A DNA stretch of 64,000 bases, taken from IMG/VR virus record IMGVR_UViG_3300018424_000006, positions 155,820 to 219,819 of that record, one strand, 5' to 3'. Positions 4,779-40,824 of this stretch are shown here, in pieces. Position 1 is the stretch's first letter; every line of letters begins with the position of its first letter. The position numbers and the translations under genes were made by a program. The notes beneath the pieces were generated by a model. The model was not told where the DNA came from. It did not search any database and saw only the letters and a program-made list of their open reading frames with translations.

Positions 4779-4789
4779 AAGCATATTTA

Positions 4790-4818
4790 CTCTATACCCA
4801 GCATAGCTGGGTATAGAG
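4790..4818 (+). terminator. Rho-independent terminator
   Basis: CTCTATACCCAGC-ata-GCTGGGTATAGAG 13-bp stem followed by CTTTATT. Confidence 0.8.
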
Positions 4819-4830
4819 CTTTATTCTGTT

Positions 4831-5060
4831 TTAAATTTTCTAAATGTAAATCATATAGATATTAATAATTAATTATAATATTAATTTAATATTTATTTTT
4901 ATTCTTTAAAATTACTTAAAAAATTTATTCCCTTATATTATAGACAGTAATATATTTGACGAGGAACGAGGCAAATATATATACATTTAGTAGTCAATAT
5001 CAGAACTACTAAAAATAGACCTATTTTAAGCTACTTTCTATCTTAGGATAGGAGGTAGTT
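4831..5060. other. Extremely AT-rich intergenic tract with inverted repeats
   Basis: 6 G/C in 4831-4920 and none in 4859-4903; inverted repeats at 4950-4958/4972-4980 and 5031-5042/5047-5058. Confidence 0.6.
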
Positions 5061-5133
5061 ATTATGCTGTTTAAAAATACAAATAGGTATTAGGGTATGA
5101 ATTAAACATAAACCAACCAAAAGGAATTTAGAT

Positions 5134-5700
5134 ATGAACTTCTTTAAGTTATTATGGAAACGGATAGTAATATCCATTCTAGTGGATAGACCTTTCTTTG
5201 CTTTCTCAAATGAGATAGTGGAAAGTTTCTATCGGGGTTATAAGTCAATAGGTCGTACTAGGTTTACCCAAGAGCTGGATAGGCTCTTCGTGGCAAAGAG
5301 AGCTAAGATTGATCCTAAGTACACAAGTCCTAAAGCTTTAGGTTCTTATTCAGCCTTAGAAAGATTGAAAACTTTAAACTACTGGGCTGCTTATCACACT
5401 AACCTATTTGCAGACGCATGGGCGCTTATGTCTAAAGAGCCATTGTTTTTCTCTATCTTACCTCTAAGCAAGACTCGATACGAAGACGAAGATAGTCTAC
5501 AGGACTATCTAGAAGACTCTAGAGATCTTTTTACGTTTTTGGATATAGAAGATCTATGGAGCAGTAGTCCTAGACTAGATTTATATAACCGCCTAGTCGC
5601 TTACAAGGAAGTCTATGAAGAACGTGGTCAGTTAGAATACTGGCAACGAATCTATGATATGCTAAAACCAAGATTGATTGAGGTGGGTTATGACCTATAA
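5134..5700 (+). CDS. Hypothetical protein (KR-I-x-L-x-P family)
   Basis: 188 aa with AAGGA RBS; N-terminus LLWKRIVISILVDRPF. Confidence 0.7.
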   Translation: MNFFKLLWKRIVISILVDRPFFAFSNEIVESFYRGYKSIGRTRFTQELDRLFVAKRAKIDPKYTSPKALGSYSALERLKTLNYWAAYHTNLFADAWALMSKEPLFFSILPLSKTRYEDEDSLQDYLEDSRDLFTFLDIEDLWSSSPRLDLYNRLVAYKEVYEERGQLEYWQRIYDMLKPRLIEVGYDL

Positions 5701-6247
5701 GAATTGGTTCAAACGAAAGATCCTAAGTTTCTTTCTTGATATTCCTATGGACTATGTTCCGATGCGTTATGCAGACGCAGCATTTGCACATCTGACTAAT
5801 GGTCCTTGGGAAACCAGAAAGTATCGTGCTCGGATGTATTTAGCTCAGTGTAGAAGTATTCCGTGCAAAGACTCTACCCCGGATGTACTTTATTTATATC
5901 CGTTCCATGAGGTACTTACCTATCTTGCCGATAATCAATACGACATGGAGAAGGCCAAGTTCTTATGGAAAGATAAGAACATGGCCAAACACTGGATGGA
6001 AGTCTTTAGGGTATATAAGCTAGCGGATGGTACATATTCCAATAGTAATTTTATTTCGAATTACTATCTTAAGTTGGCAGGCTATATCGATATGGGTACT
6101 CCCGGGTTTTTAGAAGCGCTGGATGACTTTATTATGAATTTGAATGTAGTAGCCTACTCTGTCCAGGATGCCGATAAACACGTTGCTCTAGTTCAGGAGA
6201 TTGAAGTTTATAAGAAGCTACAATCTAAGCTTAGGGGCGAATCATGA
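5690..6247 (+). CDS. Hypothetical protein (KR-I-x-L-x-P family)
   Basis: Start moved to ATG 5690 (GAGGTGG RBS); N-terminus WFKRKILSFFLDIPM. Confidence 0.7.
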   Translation: MTYKNWFKRKILSFFLDIPMDYVPMRYADAAFAHLTNGPWETRKYRARMYLAQCRSIPCKDSTPDVLYLYPFHEVLTYLADNQYDMEKAKFLWKDKNMAKHWMEVFRVYKLADGTYSNSNFISNYYLKLAGYIDMGTPGFLEALDDFIMNLNVVAYSVQDADKHVALVQEIEVYKKLQSKLRGES

Positions 6248-6807
6248 TCAGACTAAAGCGCTATATACTAGAGGTCGTCCTACAACGGCCTCTAGAGTCG
6301 CTCACGGATAAAAACATCCTTGAGATATGGCATTACCTTCCTGATGGCGTAAAAGGTCTTATGGGGGTTTACAGCGCCCCTAAGGAATGGATTAGGAATC
6401 TTTATTTCCTAGGACTTCTCCCTATAACGGAATTTACGATCTCTGAGATTCATGATTTCTTTATAAATCCAATGTGTGATATCCATCCAGATATTCCGGG
6501 CGAACCTATACTTCCATATTACTTATCTGAAGCAGCGAAGCATAAACGCAAAGTAGAGATCTTTAAAGACTTCTGGGAAACCTGTCCTCCAAAGACTTTA
6601 TTTGCATTCTTTATGAGTCCTCATCAAAGTACTCATAAGCTGCTGTTAGAAAATGTAATAAGGGAGACGGGTAATGGCCGCTACGATTATCAGAAGTGGC
6701 TACTGAAGTATGGGAAAGATTATAGTCATATTTTCCATCAGTTACCGATGCCTTTTATACATGTCGATTTAATAACTAAGTTGGAGTTTGATTTAAGACG
6801 TAAATAG
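6244..6807 (+). CDS. Hypothetical protein (KR-I-x-L-x-P family)
   Basis: 187 aa; ATGA overlap with the upstream stop; N-terminus RLKRYILEVVLQRPL. Confidence 0.7.
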   Translation: MIRLKRYILEVVLQRPLESLTDKNILEIWHYLPDGVKGLMGVYSAPKEWIRNLYFLGLLPITEFTISEIHDFFINPMCDIHPDIPGEPILPYYLSEAAKHKRKVEIFKDFWETCPPKTLFAFFMSPHQSTHKLLLENVIRETGNGRYDYQKWLLKYGKDYSHIFHQLPMPFIHVDLITKLEFDLRRK

Positions 6808-6865
6808 GTTGTTAATCCTATGTATTAGCTTGTTCATTAATTAACCTGAAAAAGGAGAAAAGGTT

Positions 6866-7408
6866 ATGAGCTTTAAAATCTCAATGAAAACTTTGTTTAT
6901 AAAGTTTTTACCATTAGCGTTGTTGTCTGGGTTGTCTCGACGCTTAACTGCTGCGTTGTTTATTGGTCCTCGCGGTTTTAAATTAGATAACGAAGGTCTT
7001 GATATGGCAATCGCTGCTATCAAGAAAACGCCTCTGTCAATCTTTCTGCGTCCATTTGAATTACTAGAGAAGCTTTATCTAGCTAATAAGCTAGAGGCTT
7101 CTCAATTGTTCAATGAAGAGATTGCAAACTTTACTGAAGAATCCTACATCGCCATTATTAACCGCTACCTGACTCTGAATCCAGAGCGGGCTAGAATGAT
7201 ATGGAACTGGACCTCTTTAGATCGTCAATTACATATTCTTTTGAATAGCCATTTCTTGTCTGCTAAGATCAGCAACCTTGGCGATGTAATTGCAAACGAG
7301 CCGTTGATTAAAACTGTTTGGGATGCAAACACCCCATTCAAGAAAGGTGAGCGTCAGCGTGCTAAGAACTTAATCCGCAGAATGTATCCGCATCTGGATT
7401 TGACTTAA
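6866..7408 (+). CDS. Hypothetical protein
   Basis: 180 aa with AGGAGAA RBS; helical composition. Confidence 0.75.
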   Translation: MSFKISMKTLFIKFLPLALLSGLSRRLTAALFIGPRGFKLDNEGLDMAIAAIKKTPLSIFLRPFELLEKLYLANKLEASQLFNEEIANFTEESYIAIINRYLTLNPERARMIWNWTSLDRQLHILLNSHFLSAKISNLGDVIANEPLIKTVWDANTPFKKGERQRAKNLIRRMYPHLDLT

Positions 7409-7518
7409 AATAAACAGATGACCTTATACTTTGTAATTACTATTGATCCAGTCGTTAACTTGTTTGGTAGTGGTTCTTTAAAAATTCGATTTTAAATCAA
7501 ATTTTAAATTAGCCCTTA

Positions 7519-7947
7519 GGAACAATATTGATAGTTCCGTGCCTTTTATGGTGGGCAATAAGACTAACAGTAAAGAGACTCCTGTTAACTGGTCCTCGTT
7601 TTCCCGGGTTACACTGACCGTTAGTCTTCTCCAAATTTACGTCTTCTTGTCGGATCTGCTGGGTGTCCGACATTTAGGTTGGAAAGGTATGAAGGCCGCT
7701 ATAAGCTTTAGCGTTTTTTTGCGGCTTCTCCCACTCGTGCTGCTTTGTTACTTACGCTCGTTATTGGCAACGTCCTTTTGGTTGGTTCGTCGTGCCAGAA
7801 TAAGCTATTCCGGATATTTTTCTAATGGGTTTATATCCGTGCGACTCACAGCGGCCTTTATACCGATCCTTCTCCACTTCTCCCTTACCCGCACAGACTT
7901 TGTCCTCACTGCAGTCTTCGGATTGCAGTGGGGCGTTTTCTGCCGTT
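7519..7947 (+). ncRNA. Candidate large structured non-coding RNA (family unassigned)
   Basis: No credible ORF. Multiple stems, including a 15-bp long-range helix 7686-7700/7850-7864 and a 13-bp cUUCGg hairpin 7904-7933. G-U pairs work only on the plus strand. Boundaries are approximate. Confidence 0.6.
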
Positions 7948-8007
7948 AAAAAAAAATAAAGAGGCTCCTGAGTTATTGTAATCAACCCAGCCAAGAGAAA
8001 AACTTCG

Positions 8008-8994
8008 ATGTTAAAATTACATAAACTCCCCTACTCTCGATTTCAAGAACTTGTCGATGAAGATATCTTCCCTGCCGCTATCGGTGATGAGCTACTTGCT
8101 TTCCAAATCCAGAAGAAAGAAGGTAACTTGTTTATCGCTTATTTCGATATGGATAAATTCGGTACCGTTAATACTGAAACTAACGTTACCTATCGTGAGT
8201 TACAACTACCGGTAGAAGTTGAAACTATCGGTAGATTGCGCCTAGAATGTAGTAATGCATTCGCGGTCCCAGTAACATATAAAGACCCCCAAACTAAAAA
8301 GATCGTCAATCAGCTACTGCATGTCAAAGATTATCTGCCGGGTCAAGAAACTCTAATCACTTTTGATAATCTTAATCTGACAGATCACTATGAGCTTGAG
8401 ATTAATGAGAAAAGTTTTAAGGTAACTCCGGCAACTGGTACTGTACTGAAGATTTCAGATTCCGATAAACTTGGTGAAATTTGTGATAGTGCTGTTGAAG
8501 CGATCAATAAAAACCCTGAAATCCATCTACAGTTTGCTTTTGAATTGCAGATGCCGTTCAGTATTCTAGGCGGTATTGATAATCTGTTCTTCGCATATAT
8601 GGATTTAGCAAAAGGACATCGCACGGCATTTGTAATCGATAGAAATACTGGCGAAGCTAAGTTGTTGTCTCAGTTATTTGCACCTCTTAATCTAGAACGC
8701 AAGTCAATAGCGATTTGCGGACATAACTCCGACGGCTTCTTTGTGCTCTTCGGCCATCAAGATGGCGAGCGTAGTGGTTCGATTATGTTCGTTACTTATG
8801 ACGAACTACGTAACTGGAAGATCACAGATGGCTCTTTAACTACTGAAGCGATTGTGTTCCGAGACGAAATCTATCTTCTTGGTGAAGATGGTTACTTCAT
8901 TAATGATGCCACTGGTGATATCGTTGGTCGTCTTAATGAAGACGAACTACTTGTTGCAGTATCTCCAAATCTACCTTTCATTTTGATTGGTTAA
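8008..8994 (+). CDS. Hypothetical beta-rich protein (possible beta-propeller)
   Basis: 328 aa ORF followed by a terminator; repeated short hydrophobic strands with G/D turns; weak RBS. Confidence 0.7.
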   Translation: MLKLHKLPYSRFQELVDEDIFPAAIGDELLAFQIQKKEGNLFIAYFDMDKFGTVNTETNVTYRELQLPVEVETIGRLRLECSNAFAVPVTYKDPQTKKIVNQLLHVKDYLPGQETLITFDNLNLTDHYELEINEKSFKVTPATGTVLKISDSDKLGEICDSAVEAINKNPEIHLQFAFELQMPFSILGGIDNLFFAYMDLAKGHRTAFVIDRNTGEAKLLSQLFAPLNLERKSIAICGHNSDGFFVLFGHQDGERSGSIMFVTYDELRNWKITDGSLTTEAIVFRDEIYLLGEDGYFINDATGDIVGRLNEDELLVAVSPNLPFILIG

Positions 8995-10520: not shown

Positions 10521-10600
10521 CAAATATTCTAAAAATACATATCCTACTTAGCGTATGAAGTAGTAACCAACCAAATTAAAAAAACCTACGGAGAAGGAAA

Positions 10601-11098
10601 ATGATTACATATGTTGAAGGCGATGTCTTCGATAAGAAACTCCTTAAAGAAAATGACTTCTTTTTACATCTAGCCAATTGCCATAAAACAATGGGTGCGG
10701 GTGTAGCTCTGGGAGTGAAGCATTTTATGCCGGAGCTATATCAGGCTGACCTAAATGATTCTCGAACCCCAAAACAGAGGCTGGGTTCTTATAGTACCGC
10801 CAGCGTTACTCTGACTGAAAGTATCCCTAGTATGAGAATTCCTGCCGAAAAAATAACGGGTGTCAATATTTATGGCCAGTTTTATTACGGTAGAGAACAA
10901 ACCTACGTACGGTATAAAGACTTAGAGGCAGCACTTTTAGCTTTCCATAAATCTTTCGAGTTGAAAGAAACCTCTAGAATCATCATGCCTATGATGGGTT
11001 CCGGTCTAGCTGGCGGTAGTTGGAAACGTGTTGAAGAAATCATCGGACGCACTTTCCCATTGCAAAAAGTAACAGTAGTTATTAAGAAGGATCAGTAA
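10601..11098 (+). CDS. Macrodomain (ADP-ribose binding/processing) protein
   Basis: ITYVEGDVF, ANCHKTMGAGVA, NIYGQ and MPMMGSGLAGGSW match macrodomain motifs. Confidence 0.88.
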   Translation: MITYVEGDVFDKKLLKENDFFLHLANCHKTMGAGVALGVKHFMPELYQADLNDSRTPKQRLGSYSTASVTLTESIPSMRIPAEKITGVNIYGQFYYGREQTYVRYKDLEAALLAFHKSFELKETSRIIMPMMGSGLAGGSWKRVEEIIGRTFPLQKVTVVIKKDQ

Positions 11099-12661: not shown

Positions 12662-12807
12662 TGCTCGTCTACCCACTTAGGGTCGTTATAGCACGAAGAA
12701 CAGTGATCCTGATATTCACGATTACCGTCTTCGTCTACTCCAGTTAAAACGATCTGTGCTCCGCAGCAGTCAGAAACTTTATCGTCCATATCTGTAGTTG
12801 TTTGCAT
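12658..12807 (-). CDS. 49-aa zinc-finger-like microprotein (absent from ORF track)
   Basis: MQTTTDMDDKVSDCCGAQIVLTGVDEDGNREYQDHCSSCYNDPKWVDEQ; GAGGAGAA RBS; ATGA coupling to the next gene. Confidence 0.75.
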   Translation of the reverse strand: MQTTTDMDDKVSDCCGAQIVLTGVDEDGNREYQDHCSSCYNDPKWVDEQ

Positions 12808-12811
12808 TTTT

Positions 12812-12985
12812 TTATTTCTCCTCTCTACCAGATTTATTGTCCGTCACTCTAACCGGCCTCATATCCCAACTACATTTACTGCAGTGATCAGAATAGTAAT
12901 GCCAGCCATTTTTAAATTTGCCGTAATAATCAACAGGCACATTGCAGCAGGGAGAAATAAAATCACCCTTCTTCTTAGTCCTCAT
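12812..12985 (-). CDS. 57-aa zinc-finger-like microprotein (absent from ORF track)
   Basis: MRTKKKGDFISPCCNVPVDYYGKFKNGWHYYSDHCSKCSWDMRPVRVTDNKSGREEK; first ORF after the early promoter at 13019-13031. Confidence 0.75.
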   Translation of the reverse strand: MRTKKKGDFISPCCNVPVDYYGKFKNGWHYYSDHCSKCSWDMRPVRVTDNKSGREEK

Positions 12986-13018
12986 CTAGCAACCCTTTTA
13001 TTATCTCATGTCAATATA

Positions 13019-13031
13019 GTAATATAGAATT
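13019..13031 (-). promoter_or_regulatory. Early promoter (TATATTAC)
   Basis: AATTCTATATTAC on the minus strand. Confidence 0.75.
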
Positions 13032-13057
13032 GAAATGTTTTCCACAACGGCAAAAAA

Positions 13058-13084
13058 CTCCATGCCCCAACTACGGACATGGAG
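13058..13084 (-). terminator. Rho-independent terminator
   Basis: CTCCATG...CATGGAG stem with an A6 run (U-tract on minus), just after the 13094 stop. Confidence 0.6.
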
Positions 13085-13093
13085 TGAAAGGCC

Positions 13094-19536: not shown

Positions 19537-20445
19537 ATGAACATTTATGAAACCTATTATGGCAAAAACCTTCGCGCACTTGCCGGTGAAGTAACAAAGC
19601 AGCTTAAAACTTACATTGCGATGAACGATGAAAATCTAAAACAGTCAGAAGTAGGCAATGTTTACTATCTTTCTATTGAAGACGAAAACGTCATTCAATG
19701 GAATTTCCCAATCGTTATTGATGGGAAGGCTTATGTAGATCTTCGTCCCTATCTAACTAAACAAGGTACGGTTCGTAATCCTCAAGATGTCTCAGCTGCT
19801 ATTCGTCGTGCCCAACTAGAACTTCTATGGTTAGAAGATCGAGACGACTTCGAAAACATTATGATTGGTACCGCAACAATCTTCGGTACTTGGATAGCTT
19901 CTTTATTGGCGTTTAGTCACAGCCTTTCTGGTCGTGATAAAGTAGTTATTGAAATAGCATTAACTGCTTACTATGCTGTTCTGTTTATGGACGAAGAAAA
20001 GCTAGACGATCGTGATGTCGAAAAGATCTTTGTACAGTTAGCTCGTAGTTCTAATGTTGGACGTCAAATCTTAGATGACGTTTTTGAAACAAAAGGTAGT
20101 GGTAGCTATACTTTAACCGAGGCTTTATTGGATAGAAGTATTGAACCTCTTGGTCCTGTACTGAACTGGATCAATAATGTAATCGATGTAGAAATTGAAG
20201 GTCTTTCTCCTAAGCTACTTTTCAATAAAGTAGTGAATGGTAGCTGGGTAGGTGCATTAGCGCCTGAACTAGCCTCTGCTTCATTGTACCATCCACCAAT
20301 CTTTATTAGCTTACTAGATCGTGCTATGACATATAGCTTCTTTGAGCGTACTGCTATTGGCCGTTCGGTTAAGAACAATAGTCGTAATCGCGCTGTACGT
20401 AATCTAGAGCCTTGGTTAAAACGGGCTCTTGAATATCAGGAGTAA
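19537..20445 (+). CDS. Virion structural protein (phiKZ gp28-like)
   Basis: 302 aa, first gene of the operon divergent from the sheath; synteny with phiKZ gp28-gp25. Confidence 0.7.
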   Translation: MNIYETYYGKNLRALAGEVTKQLKTYIAMNDENLKQSEVGNVYYLSIEDENVIQWNFPIVIDGKAYVDLRPYLTKQGTVRNPQDVSAAIRRAQLELLWLEDRDDFENIMIGTATIFGTWIASLLAFSHSLSGRDKVVIEIALTAYYAVLFMDEEKLDDRDVEKIFVQLARSSNVGRQILDDVFETKGSGSYTLTEALLDRSIEPLGPVLNWINNVIDVEIEGLSPKLLFNKVVNGSWVGALAPELASASLYHPPIFISLLDRAMTYSFFERTAIGRSVKNNSRNRAVRNLEPWLKRALEYQE

Positions 20446-28298: not shown

Positions 28299-28667
28299 CT
28301 AAGTGCCTAGTAGAGTTGTAACATAAGTAGTTAGGAGGATGATCGGAATAGCTACTTTCAGATAGCGCTTTCTAAAACTCCGTTCATCTTCAAGAGTTCT
28401 CCGGTCCAGACCATAACTACCGATACAGGCCATGAATAAACAAAGGATTCCTAAATGCCCTAGAAGTATTATGCCCGGCATGTTTCTTAGTACGTCGGTA
28501 ATATACTCTAGACTATTGGGCCCCGTAACAATCTTTATAATGAACACAGACATTGATAGTTGAAAGAGAGCGTGGAGTAACAGGAAGCCAAATACTCTTT
28601 TACGGTGACCAAATCCTATTCCAAGCATAAGTTGGAATAGGATTATCGTGGAAAGGTAAGCTACCAT
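28299..28667 (-). CDS. Small membrane protein
   Basis: 122 aa with three to four hydrophobic segments. Confidence 0.65.
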   Translation of the reverse strand: MVAYLSTIILFQLMLGIGFGHRKRVFGFLLLHALFQLSMSVFIIKIVTGPNSLEYITDVLRNMPGIILLGHLGILCLFMACIGSYGLDRRTLEDERSFRKRYLKVAIPIILLTTYVTTLLGT

Positions 28668-29086
28668 TAAACTTGCATCACTGCGATAAGAACGACGATA
28701 ATAACGCGGATAGCCAAAGTCTCAATAAGCGGAATTATAAAATCTTTGTACTCGCGTAGATCATCTTTCATGTTGCGCGCTTTGATTAATATGGAATAGA
28801 CAACGTCAAGTAGAACACTAATAATTAAAAGTGCGGCTACTTCGCCCAGCGCACTAGTCGCACTAAGATTAGCTAAAGCGGTAATCGCACCGCCGATCAA
28901 TAACGTATAGCCGTGATCACGAATATTTGAATAGCCTAAGCGACGGACGAAGTTTTCATTTTTTGTATCAACAACTTGATCGACATACGCTTTCGTATAA
29001 GCACGATAAAGGCTAGAACGCGTCTTAGTAAAAGTCCAGACCATAACCGCTAGTAGAAATAGCGAAATAGCGAAATTAGTTTCCAT
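28667..29086 (-). CDS. Small membrane protein
   Basis: Start moved to ATG 29086 (AAAGGA RBS); four hydrophobic segments. Confidence 0.7.
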   Translation of the reverse strand: METNFAISLFLLAVMVWTFTKTRSSLYRAYTKAYVDQVVDTKNENFVRRLGYSNIRDHGYTLLIGGAITALANLSATSALGEVAALLIISVLLDVVYSILIKARNMKDDLREYKDFIIPLIETLAIRVIIVVLIAVMQV

Positions 29087-29202
29087 GATTATTTTCCTTT
29101 TGGTTGGGATAATTGAGTTATACAGGCTATAAGAAAAATAAATAAAAAAAGAAAGAGGGTACTCTCTCCCACAGGGGGAGAGAGCTGGGTGCATTGACAG
29201 GG

Positions 29203-33721: not shown

Positions 33722-34843
33722 TTACTCCTTAAAGTACTTTTCAGAGGCTTGTCGTGAAATCTCCATAAGTACCGCATTAACAATACCCATTATTTCAGCC
33801 GACAAAACGATACGATCCATGACGGATCGCCAACCAAAGATCATATCTATACTATCACCTTCTAGAGTCTCGTTGGTACCAGTAAGGATGCCGCCAAACA
33901 CAGTTTTTAACTGACTTGCCAAAACACCCTTATCCCCAATACCTACCCCTAGGTCTTGATCGATAAATATTTCAATTGCTACTTGACCCGGCTCCACTTT
34001 GTTGCCGGATACATAAACATTTTTATCTACATAACCACTAGTGGCCATGCCGCTACTCGTCGCTTTAACGTGTTGTGCGCGACGGCGGTCTCCCGCTTCT
34101 ACAATCTTCTTAACTGACTCAGACATGTTCTCTTTCTTAGAGCGATAAAGAACTTGTATGTCGGATACCTTACCCACAATTTTAGCTTTAGGGGCATGGT
34201 TAGAAAACTTACTTAACGCAGCTAATGCTTGTTCGTCAATAGAGTCTAAAGAAACACTACCGTCTTGGATAATACATAAAGGACTATCTAGATCAGTCTC
34301 GTCCCCAATCTTGACCATATTTAGAACATGGTCATCTTCATCAACAACAATAACTTTGCGTTTAGTATAAGCAGAACCTAGTTTCTCAGCTAAAGCAGCA
34401 CTAATCAAAGAACTATCTTCTAAGGTTCCATTACCTTCCATGAAAGCAACATTGGCAATCGCCCCAACCTTAAATGTAACGTTCTTTGGATTTAACCAAT
34501 CACGTTCGAAGTAGTCCTTGTTCCATGCAACGATATCGCCTTCTTTAACTTTGTCTCCAACTTTAAAGTCGGTAATAATTTCCTGAGGAATAGTTAAACC
34601 GCCTTGGATACCATGGTTAGTCCCAATCTTAACACCGGATGTTGAACCGTCTTTATTTTTGATGTAGACATATTCGTCAGTAATCTTTTCAATTACCCCA
34701 TCCATCTTAGCAGTATATGCAAACTCATCTGCTGTACGCGCACCAATCACCTGTTCATAACCAGTACGAAGAGGCATGGATTGATAACCCTTAGCATGAA
34801 CCATAGCAGACATCTGTACGTTCAATAAATTGGCTCTTTTTCC
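33722..34843 (-). CDS. Virion RNA polymerase beta subunit (gp178-like), exon 2
   Basis: In-frame GKRANLLNVQMSA continues exon 1 HDD, matching RpoB HDDANRALMGANMQ; also contains EDS and GDK...QLKT beta motifs. Confidence 0.88.
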   Translation of the reverse strand, partial: GKRANLLNVQMSAMVHAKGYQSMPLRTGYEQVIGARTADEFAYTAKMDGVIEKITDEYVYIKNKDGSTSGVKIGTNHGIQGGLTIPQEIITDFKVGDKVKEGDIVAWNKDYFERDWLNPKNVTFKVGAIANVAFMEGNGTLEDSSLISAALAEKLGSAYTKRKVIVVDEDDHVLNMVKIGDETDLDSPLCIIQDGSVSLDSIDEQALAALSKFSNHAPKAKIVGKVSDIQVLYRSKKENMSESVKKIVEAGDRRRAQHVKATSSGMATSGYVDKNVYVSGNKVEPGQVAIEIFIDQDLGVGIGDKGVLASQLKTVFGGILTGTNETLEGDSIDMIFGWRSVMDRIVLSAEIMGIVNAVLMEISRQASEKYFKE

Positions 34844-36375
34844 TGTTGGTATTAACTAGGTGTCGTTAGTACCTAGCCAGCAGTAATCTGCTGCTGCATG
34901 TCGCCATGCAGACTAGACCATATCTTCACCTCCAGCTTTACCTGCTGAGGTGCTCTCCGTTTCGAGTCCACTTGGACCCTACACCGTGATAAGCGGTTGG
35001 TCGTTGAACCTTGATCTTAGTCTTTCTAGACCTTAGACCCTTGGCTGCTGATTGTCTCTCACTTTACTTTTTCAAACATTCACGCTCACCGTTTCCAGTC
35101 ACGTTGTAGTAGTAAGCTTCTGAGTAGACCGGGTATGCAATTTATTAAAAATACCCGGCCCAGTTAAGCCATAACAACTTAACAGTTTCCAGCAATTAGA
35201 AGAGATTCTGACTAATCATTTCTGAATTAGCAGGACAGAATCAGTTTTAATTTCTTTGTAAATATCAGAATAGTTGTAGAACTTAAAGCCCTTCTTACGA
35301 GTTTTACCGGGACATTTGTTTATCCAGTAAGACATGGTTGTTTTACCAACCTCGAAGCTTCTAGCCGCATCAGCTAGTCTGATATAAATCCTCTCTTCAC
35401 CAGTCTCATCATTCTTGCAATAGATAGCACTATAGCCAGAACTCTTTTCGTAGTTAAGAACTGGATCATCCACAGTCTCCCATGGAGTTCCATCATCCAT
35501 CTTCAGCAAGTACAGGTTACCTTTAACAGCGAAGACTTCGAATGGATTATTTTTAATCCTAGTTGTAATGTTACTTTCCGGTAAGTCAATGGCACGTGCC
35601 GCTTCCCGGAAAGAACCATAACGCTCTATAGACCCCTTACAGTAGTCTTTTACCAGTATGGGTATCGATCTACCATAATTCTGCATTTCAAGCCGTAGTG
35701 CTTCATTAGAGGCCTTTTTCCATGGCGTTGTCGAAGTCCCGGACTTGTATAGCTTCCCTTCAGGAAAGATTTTCTGTCCGTCGCTACCTATGCGCTTCAG
35801 TAACTCGCCGCTACTCAATCCAAGTGTCTCCATTGCAATGGAGCGAAGAGGAAACTCTTCTATTTCTCCAGTGAATGGATCATAACTTATTAGAGGTGAG
35901 CGTGTACGCTTAAGTCCTGTGTCGACTGAATGTCTTACGTTCTCTTTAGCTGTACACCATTCAAGATTCTCTGCCGAATTGTCCTTAGGTAAACCATTTT
36001 TATGATTTACTTGTAAAGACTCCTTATTTGGAGTTTCTGGATAAAAGGCGGCTGCTGCTAATCGATGAAGAGCTACATGTACCTTCTTTCCGCTATCGTC
36101 AATAAAGCGGGTAGTAATGTAGCCTCTATCGTTAGGACTGACTTCCAGTAGACGACCGGTTTCTTTTACCTTAAATCTACCTTTGGCATTTACGCAATAA
36201 CGGCTAAAGTTAGGGATTTCGAAGAAGGTCTCGTCGCCCTCAACTGGTTTTGGATTAAAAATATTTCTCATTGTAATATACCTAATACTGATACATACAA
36301 TAAGATGACCTAAAATACTAACTGTACAAATTATAGATTAGGTCGCCAAAGAAATTATGAAACTAATTTTAGTTT
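34844..36375 (-). mobile_element. Group I self-splicing intron (IA2-like) with homing endonuclease ORF
   Basis: P1 GAUGAU/GUCAUC with a terminal U-G pair; P3 CUCUUC (35199-35204)/GGAGAG (34953-34958); P4 UGCUG (35190-35194)/CAGCA (35046-35050); P7 GACCA (34998-35002)/UGGUC (34916-34920); R element GUUCAACGACC, S element AAGAUAUGGUC; P9 hairpins. Confidence 0.92.
35216..36271 (-). CDS. Intron-encoded NUMOD4-HNH homing endonuclease
   Basis: NUMOD4 (IPNFSRYCVN..G), HRLAA..F, VNHKNG..DN..ENLEWCT..EN..H, and C-terminal NUMOD1-like helices (SFREAARAI, LADAARSF). Confidence 0.93.
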   Translation of the reverse strand: MRNIFNPKPVEGDETFFEIPNFSRYCVNAKGRFKVKETGRLLEVSPNDRGYITTRFIDDSGKKVHVALHRLAAAAFYPETPNKESLQVNHKNGLPKDNSAENLEWCTAKENVRHSVDTGLKRTRSPLISYDPFTGEIEEFPLRSIAMETLGLSSGELLKRIGSDGQKIFPEGKLYKSGTSTTPWKKASNEALRLEMQNYGRSIPILVKDYCKGSIERYGSFREAARAIDLPESNITTRIKNNPFEVFAVKGNLYLLKMDDGTPWETVDDPVLNYEKSSGYSAIYCKNDETGEERIYIRLADAARSFEVGKTTMSYWINKCPGKTRKKGFKFYNYSDIYKEIKTDSVLLIQK

Positions 36376-39180
36376 ATCATCGTGGTTAGTGCCCGGCATT
36401 AATAGGCCAGTGGTGGATAGCACACTACTAGAACCTTGTCCTTCTTTATAACGACTACTCACACCACGAACAGTGTCAATATTAGCGTTAGGAGAAAGAA
36501 TAGAACGAATACCTACTTTAGCACTATCTGGCGTACCTTCTGAGATAAGACCTAAGTCATTCTTATGGAAGATACGAGAACGCTTAACAAGAGTCTCTGC
36601 TGAACGACCACCCGCACCACCTAGGTTAACAGTTTCCTGTTCCTTTAAGCTGCTGATTGGATTCAGAGAACTTGCAGGAATAGTTGTTTGGTCGTTCTGG
36701 ATATCACCCATTACTGCCATTGGATTTACATCAATAGTAGCTGTCTTAGTAAACTGATTGTTCCTATGGCCACGCACACCTTCAACAAGTCTACGATACA
36801 AGGTACCAGAGAAACGCTCAATGCCACGGATACGCATGAACTCAGGATCAGTCTCATCAGGATGACGGTCGTCTTGAAGTAACTCAACCGCATAAAGCAA
36901 TAGCTCTTTATAGACAGTTGGTTGGTCTTTAGACTTTAGGATTTCTTCAGTGATTGGATCAATGAACATATCTTCCAAAAGTTCTAATTCATTTAAGTGG
37001 TAGTTACTACCGCCTAGGAATGTCATTAGAGGACCATAGCCTTCTTTACGGTTTAGCTGATCCATACGCAAAGTATGAATGGCTTTTCGTACAGGACGGA
37101 AGCCAGCATAAAGCATTGAGATCTCAGAGCGGCTAGCGTCGATAATAACCGTTTCGTCTTTAAACTTAACAGCAATTTCGTTGGCTTCAATAGGCTCACG
37201 AGAACCAGTGGCGACTATTCGGTAATTTACTTTGAGATACTTAAGTAGTTTCTCAAAACCTAGCAGATAAGAAAGAACCATAACAATAGGTACTTGCTTA
37301 TTGAAGACAGACATTACAATATGGTCACGAGGAGCAGTTCCTGCTTCAGGTAGAATGAAAGACTCTAGACGACCTTTAGACTCTGAATTACCCTTAGAAT
37401 GAAGAGTCAGTGCATTGTCCATATTGATAGTTAAGAACTCACCAGAGGAATTAGTAGCACAAACGACTACGCCATCTTTCTCTAGTTTCTTAAGTACGTC
37501 TTTACCGTACAATTCTTCACGTTTATCATAAGCAAAGTTGAATACAAACTTATTCGAAGTAAAGCCTTCTAACTTACTACCAATTGAGGAATAAGCTAGA
37601 GGTACCTTAGCTTCGATCTTCGTCATGTCGCCATAGCGAAGAGCCGTGATTGCTTTATTAGAAACGTCTAGACCAGCAGCATTGATATGCTTTAATAGCC
37701 AACGACCATAGTTATCTACAGCTTTAGGGGAACGCTTAATAAACGTCTTACCATAATAACTAGTCAGAGCAACCTTATCTGGTCCACTCTTACGAATTGG
37801 CATATCTACACGCTGAGAGTCAAACGTGTATTTAACACCACCCTTAAAGAAACGACCTTGGTCATCTAGTTTGGGGATTTGGAATTTAATAGTAGAACTC
37901 TTACCGGTAATAGGTTGAACTTTCACCGTGTATTCTAGCTGAGAATCCAGAGCATCTACAATCTCTTCCATCTGAACGTCGCGAACAATAACACCGGCAT
38001 CCTTAAGTTTAAGGAACATGTTATTTATATCACGGAACATGATGTTGTCCTGATAGTGCTTATCGAAATTACTTACTGAACTTTCCTTAATGGTAGGATC
38101 AATAATCTTATCGATAGCAGTAGGGATAGTACGAGAAACTACAGTCTCTTTAAATTCCACTTTAGAGGCTTCGCCGATAGGCTTACCAGTAATCGGGTCA
38201 GGAATAGATTCCGTAGCTTTGGCAAGTTCTATAATCTTAGCTTGCTCACGAGAAGACAATTGTCCTTCAGAACCTAGCTCAGAAACCATTTTAAGGATCT
38301 TAGGGCTAACCGCACCGTCAGCAGCCTGTTCAGTTTCTTTCTCAACTTCTAACGCAGCTGTCTCTACAAGACTCTTCTGCTCAACAAACTTCTCAAGTAC
38401 TTGATAGAAATGTTTCTGTCTAGTCTCTACTGAATCTTTATCGTCTTCATTAAAGCGGAATTGCAGAGCAGGAATCACGCTAACAAAACCAGCACCCATG
38501 AAAACAAAGTTAAGTTGCTTTAGCTGTTCCTCAGAAAGAGTAGAAAGACTACCTTTCCCTTCAATGAACAACCATAGGTCACGAAGTCCTAATGCTTCAA
38601 ATGTATGCCACTTAGTCGCATGCGTATTACTTAGCTCCTCAGTGATCATTTTAAAATCAGCAAAAGCAGGCAATACGTTTGGAAGACGATACAAAGAAAA
38701 CGTCTCACGTTCTTCCGTGGTAATCTTAATGCCCTTCAAGAACATATCGTTAATGTTACTCCATTCATAGTACGGAGTAAGGATATGGTCAGAGTAGTCG
38801 ATACCATGAGTTAGGAAACTATAATCATAAACAACTAAGTTACGACGACTATCTAAAGCTTTACCGATGTCGCGAGCACGACGTACACGTCCTTGACTAC
38901 GGAAGTAGACGGATTCCATCTTCTTGTAGTTTTGCTTCTTGCGGATGGCCTTACCTTTGGTAATTGGTAATTCAGTTTCATGAAAGACACGAACGTCTTT
39001 AGGGAAATTAACAATCATTGGATGGGAGCCCCGAATACCTAGTTCAGGACTGTCCATATCGATATAGTGCAAAGCAGAGTCTAAAGGTAGCTGGAAGTCT
39101 TTAGCTGGATGAACCTTAAGTAGGTTCAAGGCTTTGCCCGGAAGTATAGAAAACTTCTTTAAAAAGGGAGCATAAAGCAT
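36376..39180 (-). CDS. Virion RNA polymerase beta subunit (gp178-like), exon 1
   Basis: 935 codons ending ...LMPGTNHDD; contains QRVDMPIRK, VALTSYYGK, GGAGGRS and SEGTPDSAKVG motifs. Confidence 0.9.
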
Positions 39181-39207: not shown

Positions 39208-40824
39208 TTATTTGAAGTTCTTGAGTACCCAAGAGCTTACGTCGGTGGTTGTGTCATACATCAAACCACCAGAAGCCTGTAGGTACATTTCCTTCCCGTT
39301 TAAAATCTTACGCATTTCTTTAACAGATTCGTCCGAGTAGACTAAAGTCAAGGAGACAGTATCTCCATCGAAATCAGCTCCCAGAGGCTTAAGCATAGCG
39401 CTATGCGGAATCGTCGTATCAACGAAACTCTGTGAACCTTTATCTGCGTCTGGCATCTCAGGGAATACGCTTCCACTTGAAGTCCAGTCGTCAGCCAATT
39501 CAGTTAAAGAGATAGCAGGGTTGGTAGATTTACAATATAGCTTAGTAGGATAGATCGAACCTAAGCCAGTAACAGGATAGCGAGTAACGAAACCATACAC
39601 ACGGTCGCTAACAGAGTGCGCAGCATAATAAAATAACTCCGCCCAAGTCAATGGATAAACATTCTCTTTCTCTAGGTGAGGAGGAAGCTCTTCCATATTC
39701 TTAAAGATACGAAAAGACTTCTCATCTTTATAGATAAGAGCTAGAAAATGACCATCAACCATAACAGGCTTGTGTCTACGTTCAAGTAGATCAAAACCAT
39801 TCATGGTATCGTTAAGGCCATCTATAGTTGTCCATTTGTCCCGAGTCTTTTGTTTTAATTTTACAGGAACTAATTTAAGTGTTTTAGGATCGATTAAAGG
39901 AACCTCTCCATCTGGGTTACTGACAATATCAACTAACAAAGTTGTATTCAGCTTATGCTGAATCAAAGGAGAACAACCTTTAATAAACTGATGGATACCA
40001 ACTTGAGTTGTATTGATATCGGCAAGACGTGGACTATCCATGTCCTCTGCTGTCATGTCCATGGCACTGATAACATTCCGTGTACTACCAAATACCCGAC
40101 GTGCAGCCCACTTGCCTTGTATGAACCCTGATTTACCTGAGATCATATTCTCAAGGTATGCGTAAACTTCCAGTACTGCTCGTTGTACTTTCCATCGAGT
40201 CAAGTCTAGATCTGCAGTTTCCTTATTCTGCATTACAGGACTGATTGTTGCAGCTGAAGTTAGAACGGAGCGATAAAGTTTACTTAACTCGTGTTCGATT
40301 GGACGGCCACCTTCTGTCATCTCGATATCTCGAAGACCGGCAGGTAGGACAACCAATTTATCCATTAGAGCAACCTTACGATATTTCTCTATTAGATCGA
40401 TATTAAGATCACGTCGCTTTGATTCGTTCCGTGCAAACTTAATATCATTAAAATGTTTAACGAAGAAATGGAATCCAGTATCTCCGTCTAGTGCATCACT
40501 TCGAACAAAGTCTTTTAACTTCTTATCGAAGATTGCATATCCTTTACCTTCAAGAATATCTTTATAAAGACCTTTCAATCTAAAGATTTCCATAAGTAGT
40601 TTAGGATGAAAAACGGTTGTATTCAGTTTGATGAGTGCGTGTTGTTGATTACGCTTTTGTTCGCCAGCCAAACCGAATATAAGAGTGGAGTATAAACCTG
40701 CTGGATGATACTCTCCGCTGGACGTATCCCAAATGTCCGATGCAGTGATCTCAGCTAGATGACCTACCTTCTGTTTGGTTGGTTCAAGTATAGAGATATT
40801 AAAGGGTAGGCGCTTCTGTTGCAT
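39208..40824 (-). CDS. Virion RNA polymerase beta-prime subunit (gp180-like)
   Basis: Catalytic LGADFDGD, VTRYP and KSGFIQGKWAARR motifs. Confidence 0.92.
   Translation of the reverse strand: MQQKRLPFNISILEPTKQKVGHLAEITASDIWDTSSGEYHPAGLYSTLIFGLAGEQKRNQQHALIKLNTTVFHPKLLMEIFRLKGLYKDILEGKGYAIFDKKLKDFVRSDALDGDTGFHFFVKHFNDIKFARNESKRRDLNIDLIEKYRKVALMDKLVVLPAGLRDIEMTEGGRPIEHELSKLYRSVLTSAATISPVMQNKETADLDLTRWKVQRAVLEVYAYLENMISGKSGFIQGKWAARRVFGSTRNVISAMDMTAEDMDSPRLADINTTQVGIHQFIKGCSPLIQHKLNTTLLVDIVSNPDGEVPLIDPKTLKLVPVKLKQKTRDKWTTIDGLNDTMNGFDLLERRHKPVMVDGHFLALIYKDEKSFRIFKNMEELPPHLEKENVYPLTWAELFYYAAHSVSDRVYGFVTRYPVTGLGSIYPTKLYCKSTNPAISLTELADDWTSSGSVFPEMPDADKGSQSFVDTTIPHSAMLKPLGADFDGDTVSLTLVYSDESVKEMRKILNGKEMYLQASGGLMYDTTTDVSSWVLKNFK

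What the first reader, a model, noticed from the sequence alone, without database searches (positions are those of the whole stretch)
7519..7947. Candidate new ~430-nt structured ncRNA in a jumbo phage
This ORF-free region is more GC-rich than the nearby intergenic DNA and is densely paired. Helices: GGAAC/GTTCC (7519-7538); AAGACTAAC/GTTAGTCTT (7560-7568/7620-7628); TGTCGGA/TCCGACA (7648-7672); a 15-bp long-range helix GGTATGAAGGCCGCT/AGCGGCCTTTATACC (7686-7700/7850-7864) enclosing three smaller hairpins (7765-7797, 7798-7810, 7811-7839); a possible pseudoknot GTGCG/CGCAC (7839-7843/7890-7894); and a terminal 13-bp cUUCGg hairpin (7904-7933). G-U wobbles and the UUCG loop favour the plus strand. 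I see no hallmark of tRNA, tmRNA, RNase P or group I/II introns, so it may be an undescribed RNA class.
Basis: partly seen in the sequence, partly recalled or inferred. Interest (0 to 1): 0.88.

Follow-up and report, generated by a model that had tools for sequence, protein, structure and literature searches.

The report
Unverified non-coding RNA spacer in phage
A 0.5-kb stretch of a phiKZ-like jumbo phage is most likely non-coding and read on the + strand up to a normal phage terminator, but its folding is ordinary for this genome and it has no relatives, so a "new structured RNA class" cannot be shown; the best lead is that it pairs with ribosome-binding sites of the phage's own mRNAs.

Summary
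All listed helices exist at the stated coordinates. The region is the longest gene-free gap in the window (599 nt). Its GC is 0.47 (98.7th percentile) and its A content of 0.18 is the lowest in 64 kb. It is not ORF-free: one + frame is open for 155 codons (P about 0.01). That ORF looks spurious. It has no Shine-Dalgarno sequence, its codon and synonymous-codon scores lie below all 64 real genes, GC3 is 0.53, it has no homologue among 1.84 billion representatives, and the terminator lies inside it. No Rfam, tRNA or tmRNA match was found.

Folding beats shuffles (z -2.7 to -3.8), but the genome background averages z -2.1, and ensemble definition is ordinary. No homologue exists: 14 contigs carry identical copies and the neighbouring genes are also ORFans. 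Covariation therefore cannot be tested.

New lead: two accessible 15-nt stretches are perfectly complementary to sense phage mRNAs, one being the RBS of the first gene of the upstream operon (P 0.003). Four exposed CUUCUCC motifs complement the phage's GGAGAA-type RBSs.

Best guess is a terminator-bounded antisense or 3'UTR-type regulatory RNA (about 0.3). The main rival is a functionless spacer or decayed minus-strand gene start (about 0.3).

The parts
7409..7518 (+). AT-rich spacer between the stop of gene 6866-7408 and the first hairpin. It has no terminator, so read-through from the upstream four-gene ORFan operon is possible. No recognisable copy of the phage promoter motif is present.
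7482..7949 (+). 155-codon open frame (possible starts GTG 7539, ATG 7548), judged spurious.
   Evidence: Open frame P about 0.01. No SD. Codon LLR -0.38 or -0.29 against real genes at +0.235 (sd 0.126). Synonymous-codon z -4.1. GC3 0.53, z +4.6. No Pfam, PHROG, NCBIfam or PADLOC hit. No homologue. The terminator lies inside it.
7519..7538 (+). 5' hairpin, 5-bp stem
   Evidence: pair probability 0.93
7560..7628 (+). 9-bp helix closing a small branched domain
   Evidence: 0.83
7626..7632 (+). CUUCUCC motif copy 1. The other copies are at 7725-7731, 7869-7875 and 7877-7883. The motif is the complement of the GGAGAA(G)-type Shine-Dalgarno sequences of the phage.
   Evidence: 4 of the 10 copies in the window lie here. 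P 0.025 that any 7-mer occurs 4 or more times in shuffles. Mostly unpaired in the ensemble. RBS list.
7648..7672 (+). 7-bp hairpin
   Evidence: 0.69
7686..7864 (+). Domain closed by the 15-bp long-range helix 7686-7700/7850-7864
   Evidence: 0.99; P 0.04
7697..7720 (+). Small 5-bp hairpin followed by U7, terminator-like. It overlaps the 5' arm of the long helix, so the two are mutually exclusive.
7739..7753 (+). Seed A: 15 nt perfectly complementary to the + strand mRNA at 19589-19603 (codons 18-22 of gene 19537-20445)
7765..7797 (+). Hairpin whose apical part carries seed B (7773-7787). Seed B is 15 nt perfectly complementary to 5111-5125 (5'UTR plus SD of gene 5134). It also matches 13 nt at 29095-29107 (-), 12 nt at 40774-40785 (-) and 11 nt at 10565-10575.
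7811..7839 (+). Hairpin, 7-9 bp stem
7904..7947 (+). Intrinsic terminator: 13-bp stem, UUCG loop, then a U-rich tail. It has the same build as the phage's other long-stem terminators at gene ends. It ends before the stop codon of the open frame.

Best explanation
The stretch 7409-7947 is non-coding DNA at the 3' end of a + strand transcription unit of a phiKZ-like (Chimalliviridae-type) jumbo phage. It is transcribed on the + strand, either as a long 3'UTR of the four-gene ORFan operon 5134-7408 or from a start in the AT-rich spacer. Transcription ends at the terminator 7904-7933. The resulting A-poor, pyrimidine-rich RNA of about 430-530 nt is a string of hairpins whose open segments act by base pairing. 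The loop of hairpin 7765-7797 can cover the ribosome-binding site (ACCAACCAAAAGGA, 8 nt before the ATG) of the operon's first gene and of gene 28667-29086. A neighbouring linker can pair with the 5' coding part of gene 19537-20445. Four exposed CUUCUCC motifs can pair with GGAGAA(G)-type Shine-Dalgarno sequences. The predicted outcome is translational repression or altered stability of a small set of phage mRNAs, including feedback on its own operon. Shown: the non-coding character, the terminator, the helices, the complementarities and their accessibility in silico. Inferred: transcription, the 5' end, and any regulatory effect.
For: Non-coding: all six frames score negative across 7440-7980, while both flanking genes score +0.2 to +0.6 in frame. 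The open frame scores below all 64 real genes on codon and synonymous-codon usage (z -4.1). GC3 is 0.53 against a maximum of 0.434 in real genes. There is no SD and no homologue in the 5.8-billion or 1.84-billion-protein libraries.

Strand and 3' end: a 13-bp cUUCGg hairpin plus U-rich tail on the + strand belongs to the phage's family of long-stem terminators. G-U pairs in the two longest helices fit only the + strand. MFE is -135 on + against -125.5 on -. There is no terminator between 7408 and 7697.

Antisense seeds: two separate perfect 15-nt complements to sense mRNAs; P 0.003 for two matches of 14 nt or more in 1000 dinucleotide shuffles. They show no flanking similarity. Duplex energies are -28 and -29 kcal/mol. 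Opening costs are 3.3 and 3.9 kcal/mol against a median of 6.3 for 15-mers of the RNA.

The target motif is a real RBS architecture used at two gene starts and is enriched in the window. CUUCUCC occurs four times here, unpaired. Precedent: P1/P7 c4 RNA blocks an RBS of its own operon from loop-exposed complementary sequences (PMC12197685). UTR-derived ncRNA candidates are reported for phiKZ and PAK_P3 (PMC10914365).
Against: There is no expression data and no relative, so neither transcription nor conservation of seed-target pairs can be tested. Overall complementarity to translation-initiation regions is only marginally above composition-matched shuffles (P 0.05). A further 63 kb of the same genome holds no additional antisense match of 13 nt or more. 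The seed B complement can instead be read as a minus-strand copy of the phage's RBS architecture with ATA in place of ATG, which would be a relic. Several tests were run, so P values near 0.003-0.05 should be discounted. The 155-codon open frame (P about 0.01) is left as chance.
Confidence: 0.3

Rival explanations
1. Functionless spacer or relic. The stretch is decayed DNA, for example the remains of one or more minus-strand genes or a patchwork of short duplicated pieces. Only the terminator is functional, ending the upstream operon. The helices and complementarities are by-products.
For: The minus strand is purine-rich and coding-like in GC, like sense strands here. It reads ACCAACCAAAAGGA-N8-ATA, the phage's own RBS architecture with a non-start codon. 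It also carries four SD-like GGAGAAG motifs. Folding is not above the genome background. The whole block 5134-8994 is lineage-specific ORFan DNA inside a variable region that is 6 kb shorter in the relative L010. There are no further targets in 63 kb more of the genome.
Against: No minus-strand frame scores as coding, not even in pieces. The matches are sharp 15-mers without decaying flanks. The RBS complement sits in a hairpin loop flanked by an inverted repeat, at one of the most accessible sites of the + strand fold. A GC of 0.47 maintained in non-coding DNA of a 0.41-GC phage, whose other spacers are 0.23-0.33, needs a reason.
Confidence: 0.3
2. A complex-fold structured ncRNA of an undescribed class. 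Its function would rest on tertiary structure, as in GOLLD, ROOL or OLE-type RNAs.
For: It is the longest and GC-richest intergenic region. It has a 15-bp long-range helix enclosing three hairpins. Its z-score against shuffles is negative. No known family matches.
Against: Stability, ensemble diversity and entropy are ordinary for this genome. The helix count equals that in shuffles. At A 0.18 with pyrimidine-rich linkers it is unlike known large structured RNAs, whose junctions are A-rich (general knowledge). There is no second member anywhere searched.
Confidence: 0.12
3. A real gene for a small (133-136 aa), basic, hydrophobic membrane protein of foreign codon usage.
For: The frame is open for 155 codons (P 0.007-0.011 with matched composition). 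Three of the four CTTCTCC copies are in frame as Leu-Leu with spacings of 99 and 144 nt. There are hydrophobic segments of TM length. It is called as a gene on some contigs.
Against: There is no SD or alternative start context. Codon, synonymous-codon and GC3 statistics lie outside all 64 genes. The terminator hairpin and U-tract lie inside the ORF, before its stop, whereas all other strong terminators follow stop codons. There are no homologues; the single hit is a tandem-repeat artefact. Shadow ORFs of 156 and 176 codons occur elsewhere in the window.
Confidence: 0.1
4. A cis-acting leader or attenuator of the downstream gene 8008-8994. The terminator 74 nt before its ATG would be read through under some signal sensed by the upstream structure.
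For: The terminator lies between co-directional genes with only 74 nt to the next start, and no recognised promoter sits in between. Two mutually exclusive structures exist at 7686-7720.
Against: No antiterminator alternative to the 13-bp terminator was found (inspection). No riboswitch, T-box or other leader family matches. A leader of about 430 nt is unusually long.
Confidence: 0.1
5. The functional RNA is the minus strand: a purine-rich RNA carrying five RBS-like sites without ORFs, acting as a decoy for 30S subunits or an RBS-binding factor.
For: The minus strand has four GGAGAAG motifs and one full RBS motif. Its composition is more typical of structured RNAs. Its z-score is -4.1.
Against: There is no minus-strand promoter motif or terminator around the region. 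G-U pairs of the main helices become A-C mismatches. Both flanking genes are on the + strand.
Confidence: 0.05

Closest known systems
c4 antisense RNA of phages P1 and P7
   Same: A phage RNA encoded in the same transcription unit as its target. Short complementary sequences exposed in loops cover the ribosome-binding region of an mRNA of that operon (PMC12197685).
   Different: c4 is a processed RNA of about 77 nt lying upstream of its target in a temperate phage and is experimentally proven. Here the RNA would be 430-530 nt, lies downstream of the target, and is in a lytic jumbo phage. Nothing about it has been tested.
Staphylococcus aureus RNAIII (multi-hairpin regulatory RNA with C-rich anti-SD loops)
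   Same: Similar size (about 0.5 kb). A chain of hairpins with several pyrimidine-rich exposed motifs that pair with Shine-Dalgarno regions of several mRNAs. Carries an ORF-like frame. This comparison rests on my general knowledge, not on a tool result.
   Different: RNAIII is bacterial, conserved, quorum-controlled, and encodes a real peptide. There is no sequence or structural relation here.
UTR-derived ncRNA candidates of Pseudomonas phages (phiKZ 3'UTR_PHIKZ298 and 5'UTR_gp40; PAK_P3 ncRNA1/2)
   Same: Non-coding RNA species at gene ends of lytic phages, including a phiKZ-like phage. They are bounded by terminators or processing and their function is unknown (PMC10914365).
   Different: Those are 89-210 nt, detected by RNA-seq and northern blot, and conserved within their genus. 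This one is 2-5 times longer, has no expression data and has no relatives.
Large structured ncRNAs found in phages (GOLLD, ROOL) and group I introns
   Same: A long, GC-elevated intergenic region in a phage, with a multi-helix prediction.
   Different: No Rfam hit even at E<=10, whereas the real group I intron of this window scores 82.8 bits. The composition is A-poor. Folding is not above background and there is no conservation.

Membership tests
Any Rfam 15 family (including group I/II introns, RNase P, tmRNA, 6S, riboswitches, GOLLD, ROOL, OLE, HEARO) | Covariance-model score at or near the family's gathering threshold | tested here: not met
   No hit in 7300-8100 better than 17.5 bits against a threshold of 40, with E 1.6-9 and unrelated families. 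The whole-window scan finds only the intron at 34894-35259.
tRNA / tmRNA | ARAGORN-detectable cloverleaf or tmRNA tag | tested here: not met
   0 genes in the window
Group I intron | Interrupts a gene whose two halves match one protein family | tested here: inconclusive
   The flanking ORFs 6866-7408 and 8008-8994 have no homologues at all, so a split cannot be shown. The upstream ORF is one of four similar-sized tandem ORFs. The terminator at the 3' end argues for a transcript end.
Protein-coding gene | Open reading frame longer than chance | tested here: met
   155 codons, P 0.002-0.011
Protein-coding gene | Codon usage and codon-position composition of the genome's genes | tested here: not met
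   Codon LLR -0.38 against +0.235 (sd 0.126). Synonymous-codon z -4.1. GC3 z +4.6. No frame discrimination in 7680-7920.
Protein-coding gene | Ribosome-binding site, and a stop codon upstream of the terminator | tested here: not met
   No SD within 25 nt of ATG 7548 or GTG 7539. The terminator 7904-7933 and its U-tract precede the stop at 7947.
Protein-coding gene | Homologues or a known domain | tested here: not met
Base-pairing regulatory RNA (c4-like, RNAIII-like, 3'UTR-derived sRNA) | Accessible seed complementary to a target's translation-initiation region | tested here: met
   A 15-nt perfect match to the RBS of gene 5134 and a 13-nt match to the RBS of gene 29086. The seed lies in a hairpin loop with an opening energy of 3.3 kcal/mol. 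This is in silico only.
Base-pairing regulatory RNA (c4-like, RNAIII-like, 3'UTR-derived sRNA) | Defined, expressed transcript | not testable with these tools
   The 3' end is predicted from the terminator. The 5' end and expression are unknown, and no transcriptome is available.
Base-pairing regulatory RNA (c4-like, RNAIII-like, 3'UTR-derived sRNA) | Seed and target conserved or co-varying in relatives | not testable with these tools
   Only identical copies exist. There are no relatives of the region or its neighbours.
Large complex-fold structured ncRNA | Fold stability and definition above the genomic background | tested here: not met
Large complex-fold structured ncRNA | Covariation-supported helices across homologues | not testable with these tools
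   No homologue was found. A CM of 7760-7947 finds only itself, and nhmmer over 2.2 Mb of fetched loci finds only self copies.
Riboswitch / transcription attenuator | Terminator just upstream of the regulated ORF, with a competing antiterminator | tested here: inconclusive
   The terminator lies 74 nt before ATG 8008 (met). No convincing antiterminator pairing and no known aptamer were found.

The most novel reading that the evidence does not exclude
A nucleus-forming jumbo phage encodes a multi-seed anti-RBS RNA of about 0.45 kb, functionally like RNAIII or c4. It would be made from the 3' end of an accessory operon and would mask the ribosome-binding sites of that operon and of a few other phage genes. 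This would be a phage-internal layer of translational timing carried by RNA. The relative L010 carries a non-homologous but compositionally near-identical A-poor stretch of about 325 nt ending in a cUUCGg terminator at a roughly syntenic place, which hints that such RNAs could recur in this lineage.
Probability: 0.2. Interest if true: 0.65.

Novelty: new member of a known kind. Interest (0 to 1): 0.3.

Why it matters
If the RNA is real and acts as proposed, it would be one of very few trans-acting regulatory RNAs assigned targets in a lytic phage, and the first in a phiKZ-like phage. In such phages, mRNAs must leave the phage nucleus to be translated, so translational control is of particular interest. 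If it is only a spacer, the case is a useful caution. In this genome, coding DNA already folds about 2 sd better than its own shuffles. A shuffle z-score alone therefore does not single out structured RNAs, and a T-rich spacer can carry a 155-codon open frame by chance.

Tried and rejected
- **Rfam.** Searched at gathering and at E<=10: nothing.
- **tRNA/tmRNA.** ARAGORN: nothing.
- **Phage genomes.** blastn and megablast of the region and its 6-kb surroundings against 50,697 phage genomes: no match. tblastn of both flanking proteins: no match.
- **IMG/VR with flanking proteins**: self only.
- **5.8-billion-protein search.** The downstream protein, the ORF product and a profile of the four upstream ORFs were searched: self only.
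- **HMMER of the ORF product against 1.84 billion representatives**: one spurious tandem-repeat hit.
- **Other contigs.** 14 contigs carry the locus; six were aligned with the window and are 100% identical, so there is no variation to analyse.
- **DNA pattern scans.** Four scans were run: the double CUUCUCC 17-mer in IMG/VR and in metagenome contigs, the long-helix arms with a gap, and the triple-motif pattern. Hit counts were at chance level and none had extended similarity by nhmmer.
- **Walking the genome.** 63 kb more of the same phage was fetched. It holds no paralogue and no further antisense match of 13 nt or more.
- **DUF7484-anchored relatives**. L010 (42% identity) has an analogous A-poor non-coding stretch but no detectable homology (alignment P 0.15). 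L294 and L295 have no such gap.
- **Covariance model of 7760-7947**: self only, plus a generic hairpin hit at E 3.8.
- **Promoter search upstream of the region.** The phage motif TTCTATATTAC is absent. ATTTTAAATT and GTATGAA are not enriched.
- **Long-sequence duplexfold**: uninformative.
- **Minus-strand small ORFs (54 and 77 aa).** Codon scores are at the spurious level and there is no family hit.
- **AlphaFold2.** The 328-aa neighbour gave pLDDT 36, unusable, so no fold search was made.
- **Neighbour annotation.** Defence and NCBIfam scans of the neighbours gave only a weak DarG-like macrodomain at 10601-11098.

Full report
**Context.** The window is the last 64 kb of the 219.8-kb contig IMGVR_UViG_3300018424_000006. 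It is a phiKZ-like (Chimalliviridae-type) jumbo phage. It has a tail sheath, a large terminase, split multisubunit RNA-polymerase genes and DUF7484. The closest cultured relative is Vibrio phage BONAISHI, at 43% amino-acid identity in an RNAP subunit. The finding lies in a + strand block. An AT-rich spacer (4779-5133) is followed by four weakly similar ORFan genes (5134-7408), then the 599-nt gap 7409-8007, then an ORFan gene (8008-8994), then a bidirectional terminator. The relative L010 lacks this whole block: its DUF7484-to-tail module is about 6 kb shorter. The region therefore sits in variable accessory DNA.

**Observation.**
- The gap is the longest in the window.
- Its GC of 0.47 is at the 98.7th percentile.
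- Its A content of 0.18 is the lowest of any 430-nt window on either strand.

Two parts of the description fail.

First, the region is not ORF-free. One + frame has no stop from 7482 to 7949. Composition-matched shuffles give such a frame in 0.2-1.1% of cases.

Second, the pairing is not exceptional for this genome.
- The shuffle z-score is -3.8, or -2.7 with my own shuffles.
- 44 random windows of the same genome average -2.14 (sd 1.5).
- The composition-corrected MFE residual is -1.2 sd.
- Ensemble diversity and entropy are at the 28th-30th percentile.
- The number of helices of 9 bp or more equals that in shuffles.

Only the 15-bp long-range helix (P 0.04) and the terminal hairpin stand out.

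**Coding or not.** The open frame is the strongest argument for a gene, but everything else argues against it.
- There is no Shine-Dalgarno sequence, whereas most genes here have GGAG-type sites.
- The codon log-odds is -0.38 per codon. The 64 real ORFs average +0.235 (sd 0.126) and none is below -0.16.
- Synonymous-codon usage has z -4.1, with frequent CTC, TCC and CTG and none of the favoured CTA, GTA and TCA.
- GC3 is 0.53 against a maximum of 0.434.
- In sliding windows no frame on either strand scores positive between 7440 and 7980. Both neighbouring genes are clearly positive in frame.
- The score sits in the middle of the window's spurious open stretches. Shadow ORFs of 156 and 176 codons occur elsewhere.
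- The product has no domain. It has no homologue in the word-indexed 5.8-billion library or in a full HMMER pass over 1.84 billion representatives. The single hit is a translated tandem repeat.
- The terminator hairpin and its U-tract lie inside the frame, before the stop codon. Every other strong terminator of the phage follows a stop codon.

I put the coding reading at about 0.1.

**Transcription signals.** The hairpin 7904-7933 has a 13-bp stem, a UUCG loop and a U-rich tail. It has the same build as the phage's other long-stem terminators at gene ends. It works only on the + strand. The G-U pairs in the two longest helices would be A-C mismatches on the minus strand. No terminator separates gene 6866-7408 from the region. 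No copy of the phage's clear promoter motif TTCTATATTAC lies upstream on either strand; that motif has four exact intergenic copies, all on the minus strand. The simplest reading is a + strand RNA that either continues from the upstream operon as a 3'UTR of about 530 nt or starts in the AT-rich spacer. It ends at about 7940.

**Known families.** Rfam gives nothing at E<=10 on either strand, and ARAGORN gives nothing. The same Rfam scan finds the window's real group I intron at 82.8 bits. That intron, with an HNH endonuclease ORF, interrupts an RNAP beta-type gene.

**Relatives.** None were found.
- There was no DNA or protein match for the region or its neighbours in 50,697 phage genomes, in IMG/VR or in the large protein libraries.
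- The 14 contigs that carry the locus hold identical copies.
- Motif-based scans of IMG/VR and of metagenome contigs returned only chance hits, as judged by nhmmer.
- 63 kb more of the same genome holds no paralogue.
- A covariance model of the 3' half finds only itself.

Covariation, the test that would settle structure, is therefore not possible now.

**What else the sequence shows.**

(i) CTTCTCC occurs four times in the region, against ten times in the whole window. The chance that any 7-mer occurs four or more times in shuffles is P 0.025. The copies lie in predicted single strands. The motif is the exact complement of GGAGAAG, and many RBSs of this phage are GGAGAA-type.

(ii) Two 15-nt stretches, 19 nt apart, are perfectly complementary to sense-strand mRNA sequences of the phage.
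- 7773-7787 pairs with 5111-5125, the 5'UTR and SD of the first gene of the upstream operon, 8 nt before its ATG.
- 7739-7753 pairs with 19589-19603, codons 18-22 of gene 19537-20445.
- Two independent antisense matches of 14 nt or more arise in 0.3% of shuffles, and one match of 15 nt or more in 2.6%.
- There is no flanking similarity.

(iii) The first seed also matches three further sites. It matches 13 nt at 29095-29107 (-), where inspection shows the same architecture: CCAACCAAAAGGA, 8 nt, then ATG at 29086, behind a terminator. This relocates that gene's start. It also matches 12 nt and 11 nt near the 5' ends of two more genes. The motif ACCAACCAAA is enriched in the window (13 against 3.65 expected).

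(iv) Both seeds are among the most accessible 15-mers of the predicted + strand fold. Opening costs are 3.3 and 3.9 kcal/mol against a median of 6.3. Seed B forms the apical part of hairpin 7765-7797. Duplex energies are about -28 and -29 kcal/mol.

**Caveats on these signals.** Overall complementarity to all 64 translation-initiation regions is only marginally above shuffles (P 0.05). No further strong match appears in the additional 63 kb. The minus strand reads ACCAACCAAAAGGA-N8-ATA, so the seed could be a relic of a minus-strand gene start rather than a selected antisense element. Its purine-rich, coding-like composition fits that, although no minus-strand frame scores as coding.

**Mechanism and weights.**
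- My best single explanation (0.3) is a terminator-bounded + strand RNA that works by base pairing with RBS regions of a few phage mRNAs, including its own operon. This resembles the way c4 RNA of P1/P7 masks an RBS from loop-exposed sequences (PMC12197685). In size and multi-seed layout it resembles RNAIII (general knowledge). UTR-derived ncRNA candidates are documented for phiKZ and other lytic Pseudomonas phages, but they are 89-210 nt (PMC10914365).
- Nearly as likely (0.3) is a functionless spacer or relic in which only the terminator matters.
The reasons are ordinary folding, an A-poor composition, and no second member.
- A leader or attenuator for gene 8008 gets 0.1.
- A small membrane protein gets 0.1.
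- A minus-strand decoy RNA gets 0.05.

**A weak hint of recurrence.** L010, the only moderately close relative (42% in DUF7484), has its own non-coding stretch of about 325 nt directly after DUF7484. Its composition is almost the same (A 0.175, T 0.345) and it ends in a cUUCGg terminator. Sequence alignment is not significant (P 0.15) and the architectures differ, so I do not claim homology.

**Verdict.** The interpretation as a novel structured RNA class is not established and is in part contradicted. The region remains a reasonable but unverified candidate for a phage regulatory RNA, now with a concrete and testable target hypothesis. Interest is modest (0.3).

Noticed in passing
window 33722-39180 (-): An RNA-polymerase beta-type gene (phrog_3148) is split into 36355-39180 and 33722-34825. 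It is interrupted by an HNH homing-endonuclease ORF (35216-36271) and a group I intron core (Rfam RF00028, 82.8 bits, 34894-35259). This is the known arrangement of intron plus homing endonuclease in jumbo-phage RNAP genes.
   Followed up: partly
window 3904, 10508, 13019, 16355 (exact); 30167, 52045, 57312 (1 mismatch); all on the - strand: A conserved intergenic promoter-like motif, TTCTATATTAC. Three copies are preceded by GCCGTTGT-like sequence about 15 nt upstream and sit directly after a terminator, forming terminator-promoter modules.
   Followed up: partly
window 5113-5125 (+) and 29095-29107 (-): Shared RBS architecture: CCAACCAAAAGGA, 8 nt, then ATG. It shows that the true start of ORF 28667-29194 (-) is ATG 29086, downstream of a terminator at about 29140-29180. 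Related ACCAACCA(A/T)A elements lie in the 5'UTRs of genes 10601 and 15844.
   Followed up: partly
window 2778, 4790, 9007, 12128, 13057, 15804, 16391, 26834, 30205, 48151, 57772: A family of long-stem (11-17 bp) intrinsic terminators with short 3-7-nt loops at gene ends. Several share ACTACTCC...-like stems and several are bidirectional.
   Followed up: no
window 10601-11098 (+): A macro-domain protein with weak similarity to the DarG antitoxin macrodomain (NCBIfam 31.6 bits, far below the cutoff; PADLOC 1.8e-08). It is a possible counter-defence ADP-ribosyl glycohydrolase. Its leader carries both an 11-nt complement to seed B and a GGAGAAG RBS.
   Followed up: no
L010 1507-1831 (IMGVR_UViG_3300035034_000875): A distant relative has its own A-poor (0.175), T-rich non-coding stretch of about 325 nt right after the DUF7484 gene. 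It contains several hairpins and a cUUCGg terminator (1781-1803). A spurious 149-aa GTG ORF overlaps it. There is no detectable homology to the window's region.
   Followed up: partly
window 12677-13093 (-): A 417-nt 'gap' that seems to hold very small Cys-rich ORFs (CxxC-type spacing seen in the DNA), behind a terminator-promoter module. These are probably unannotated mini-proteins.
   Followed up: no
window 5134-7408 (+): Four tandem ORFan genes of 180-189 aa with about 20-23% pairwise identity, possibly a diverged paralogue array. They have no homologue outside this phage in any library searched.
   Followed up: partly
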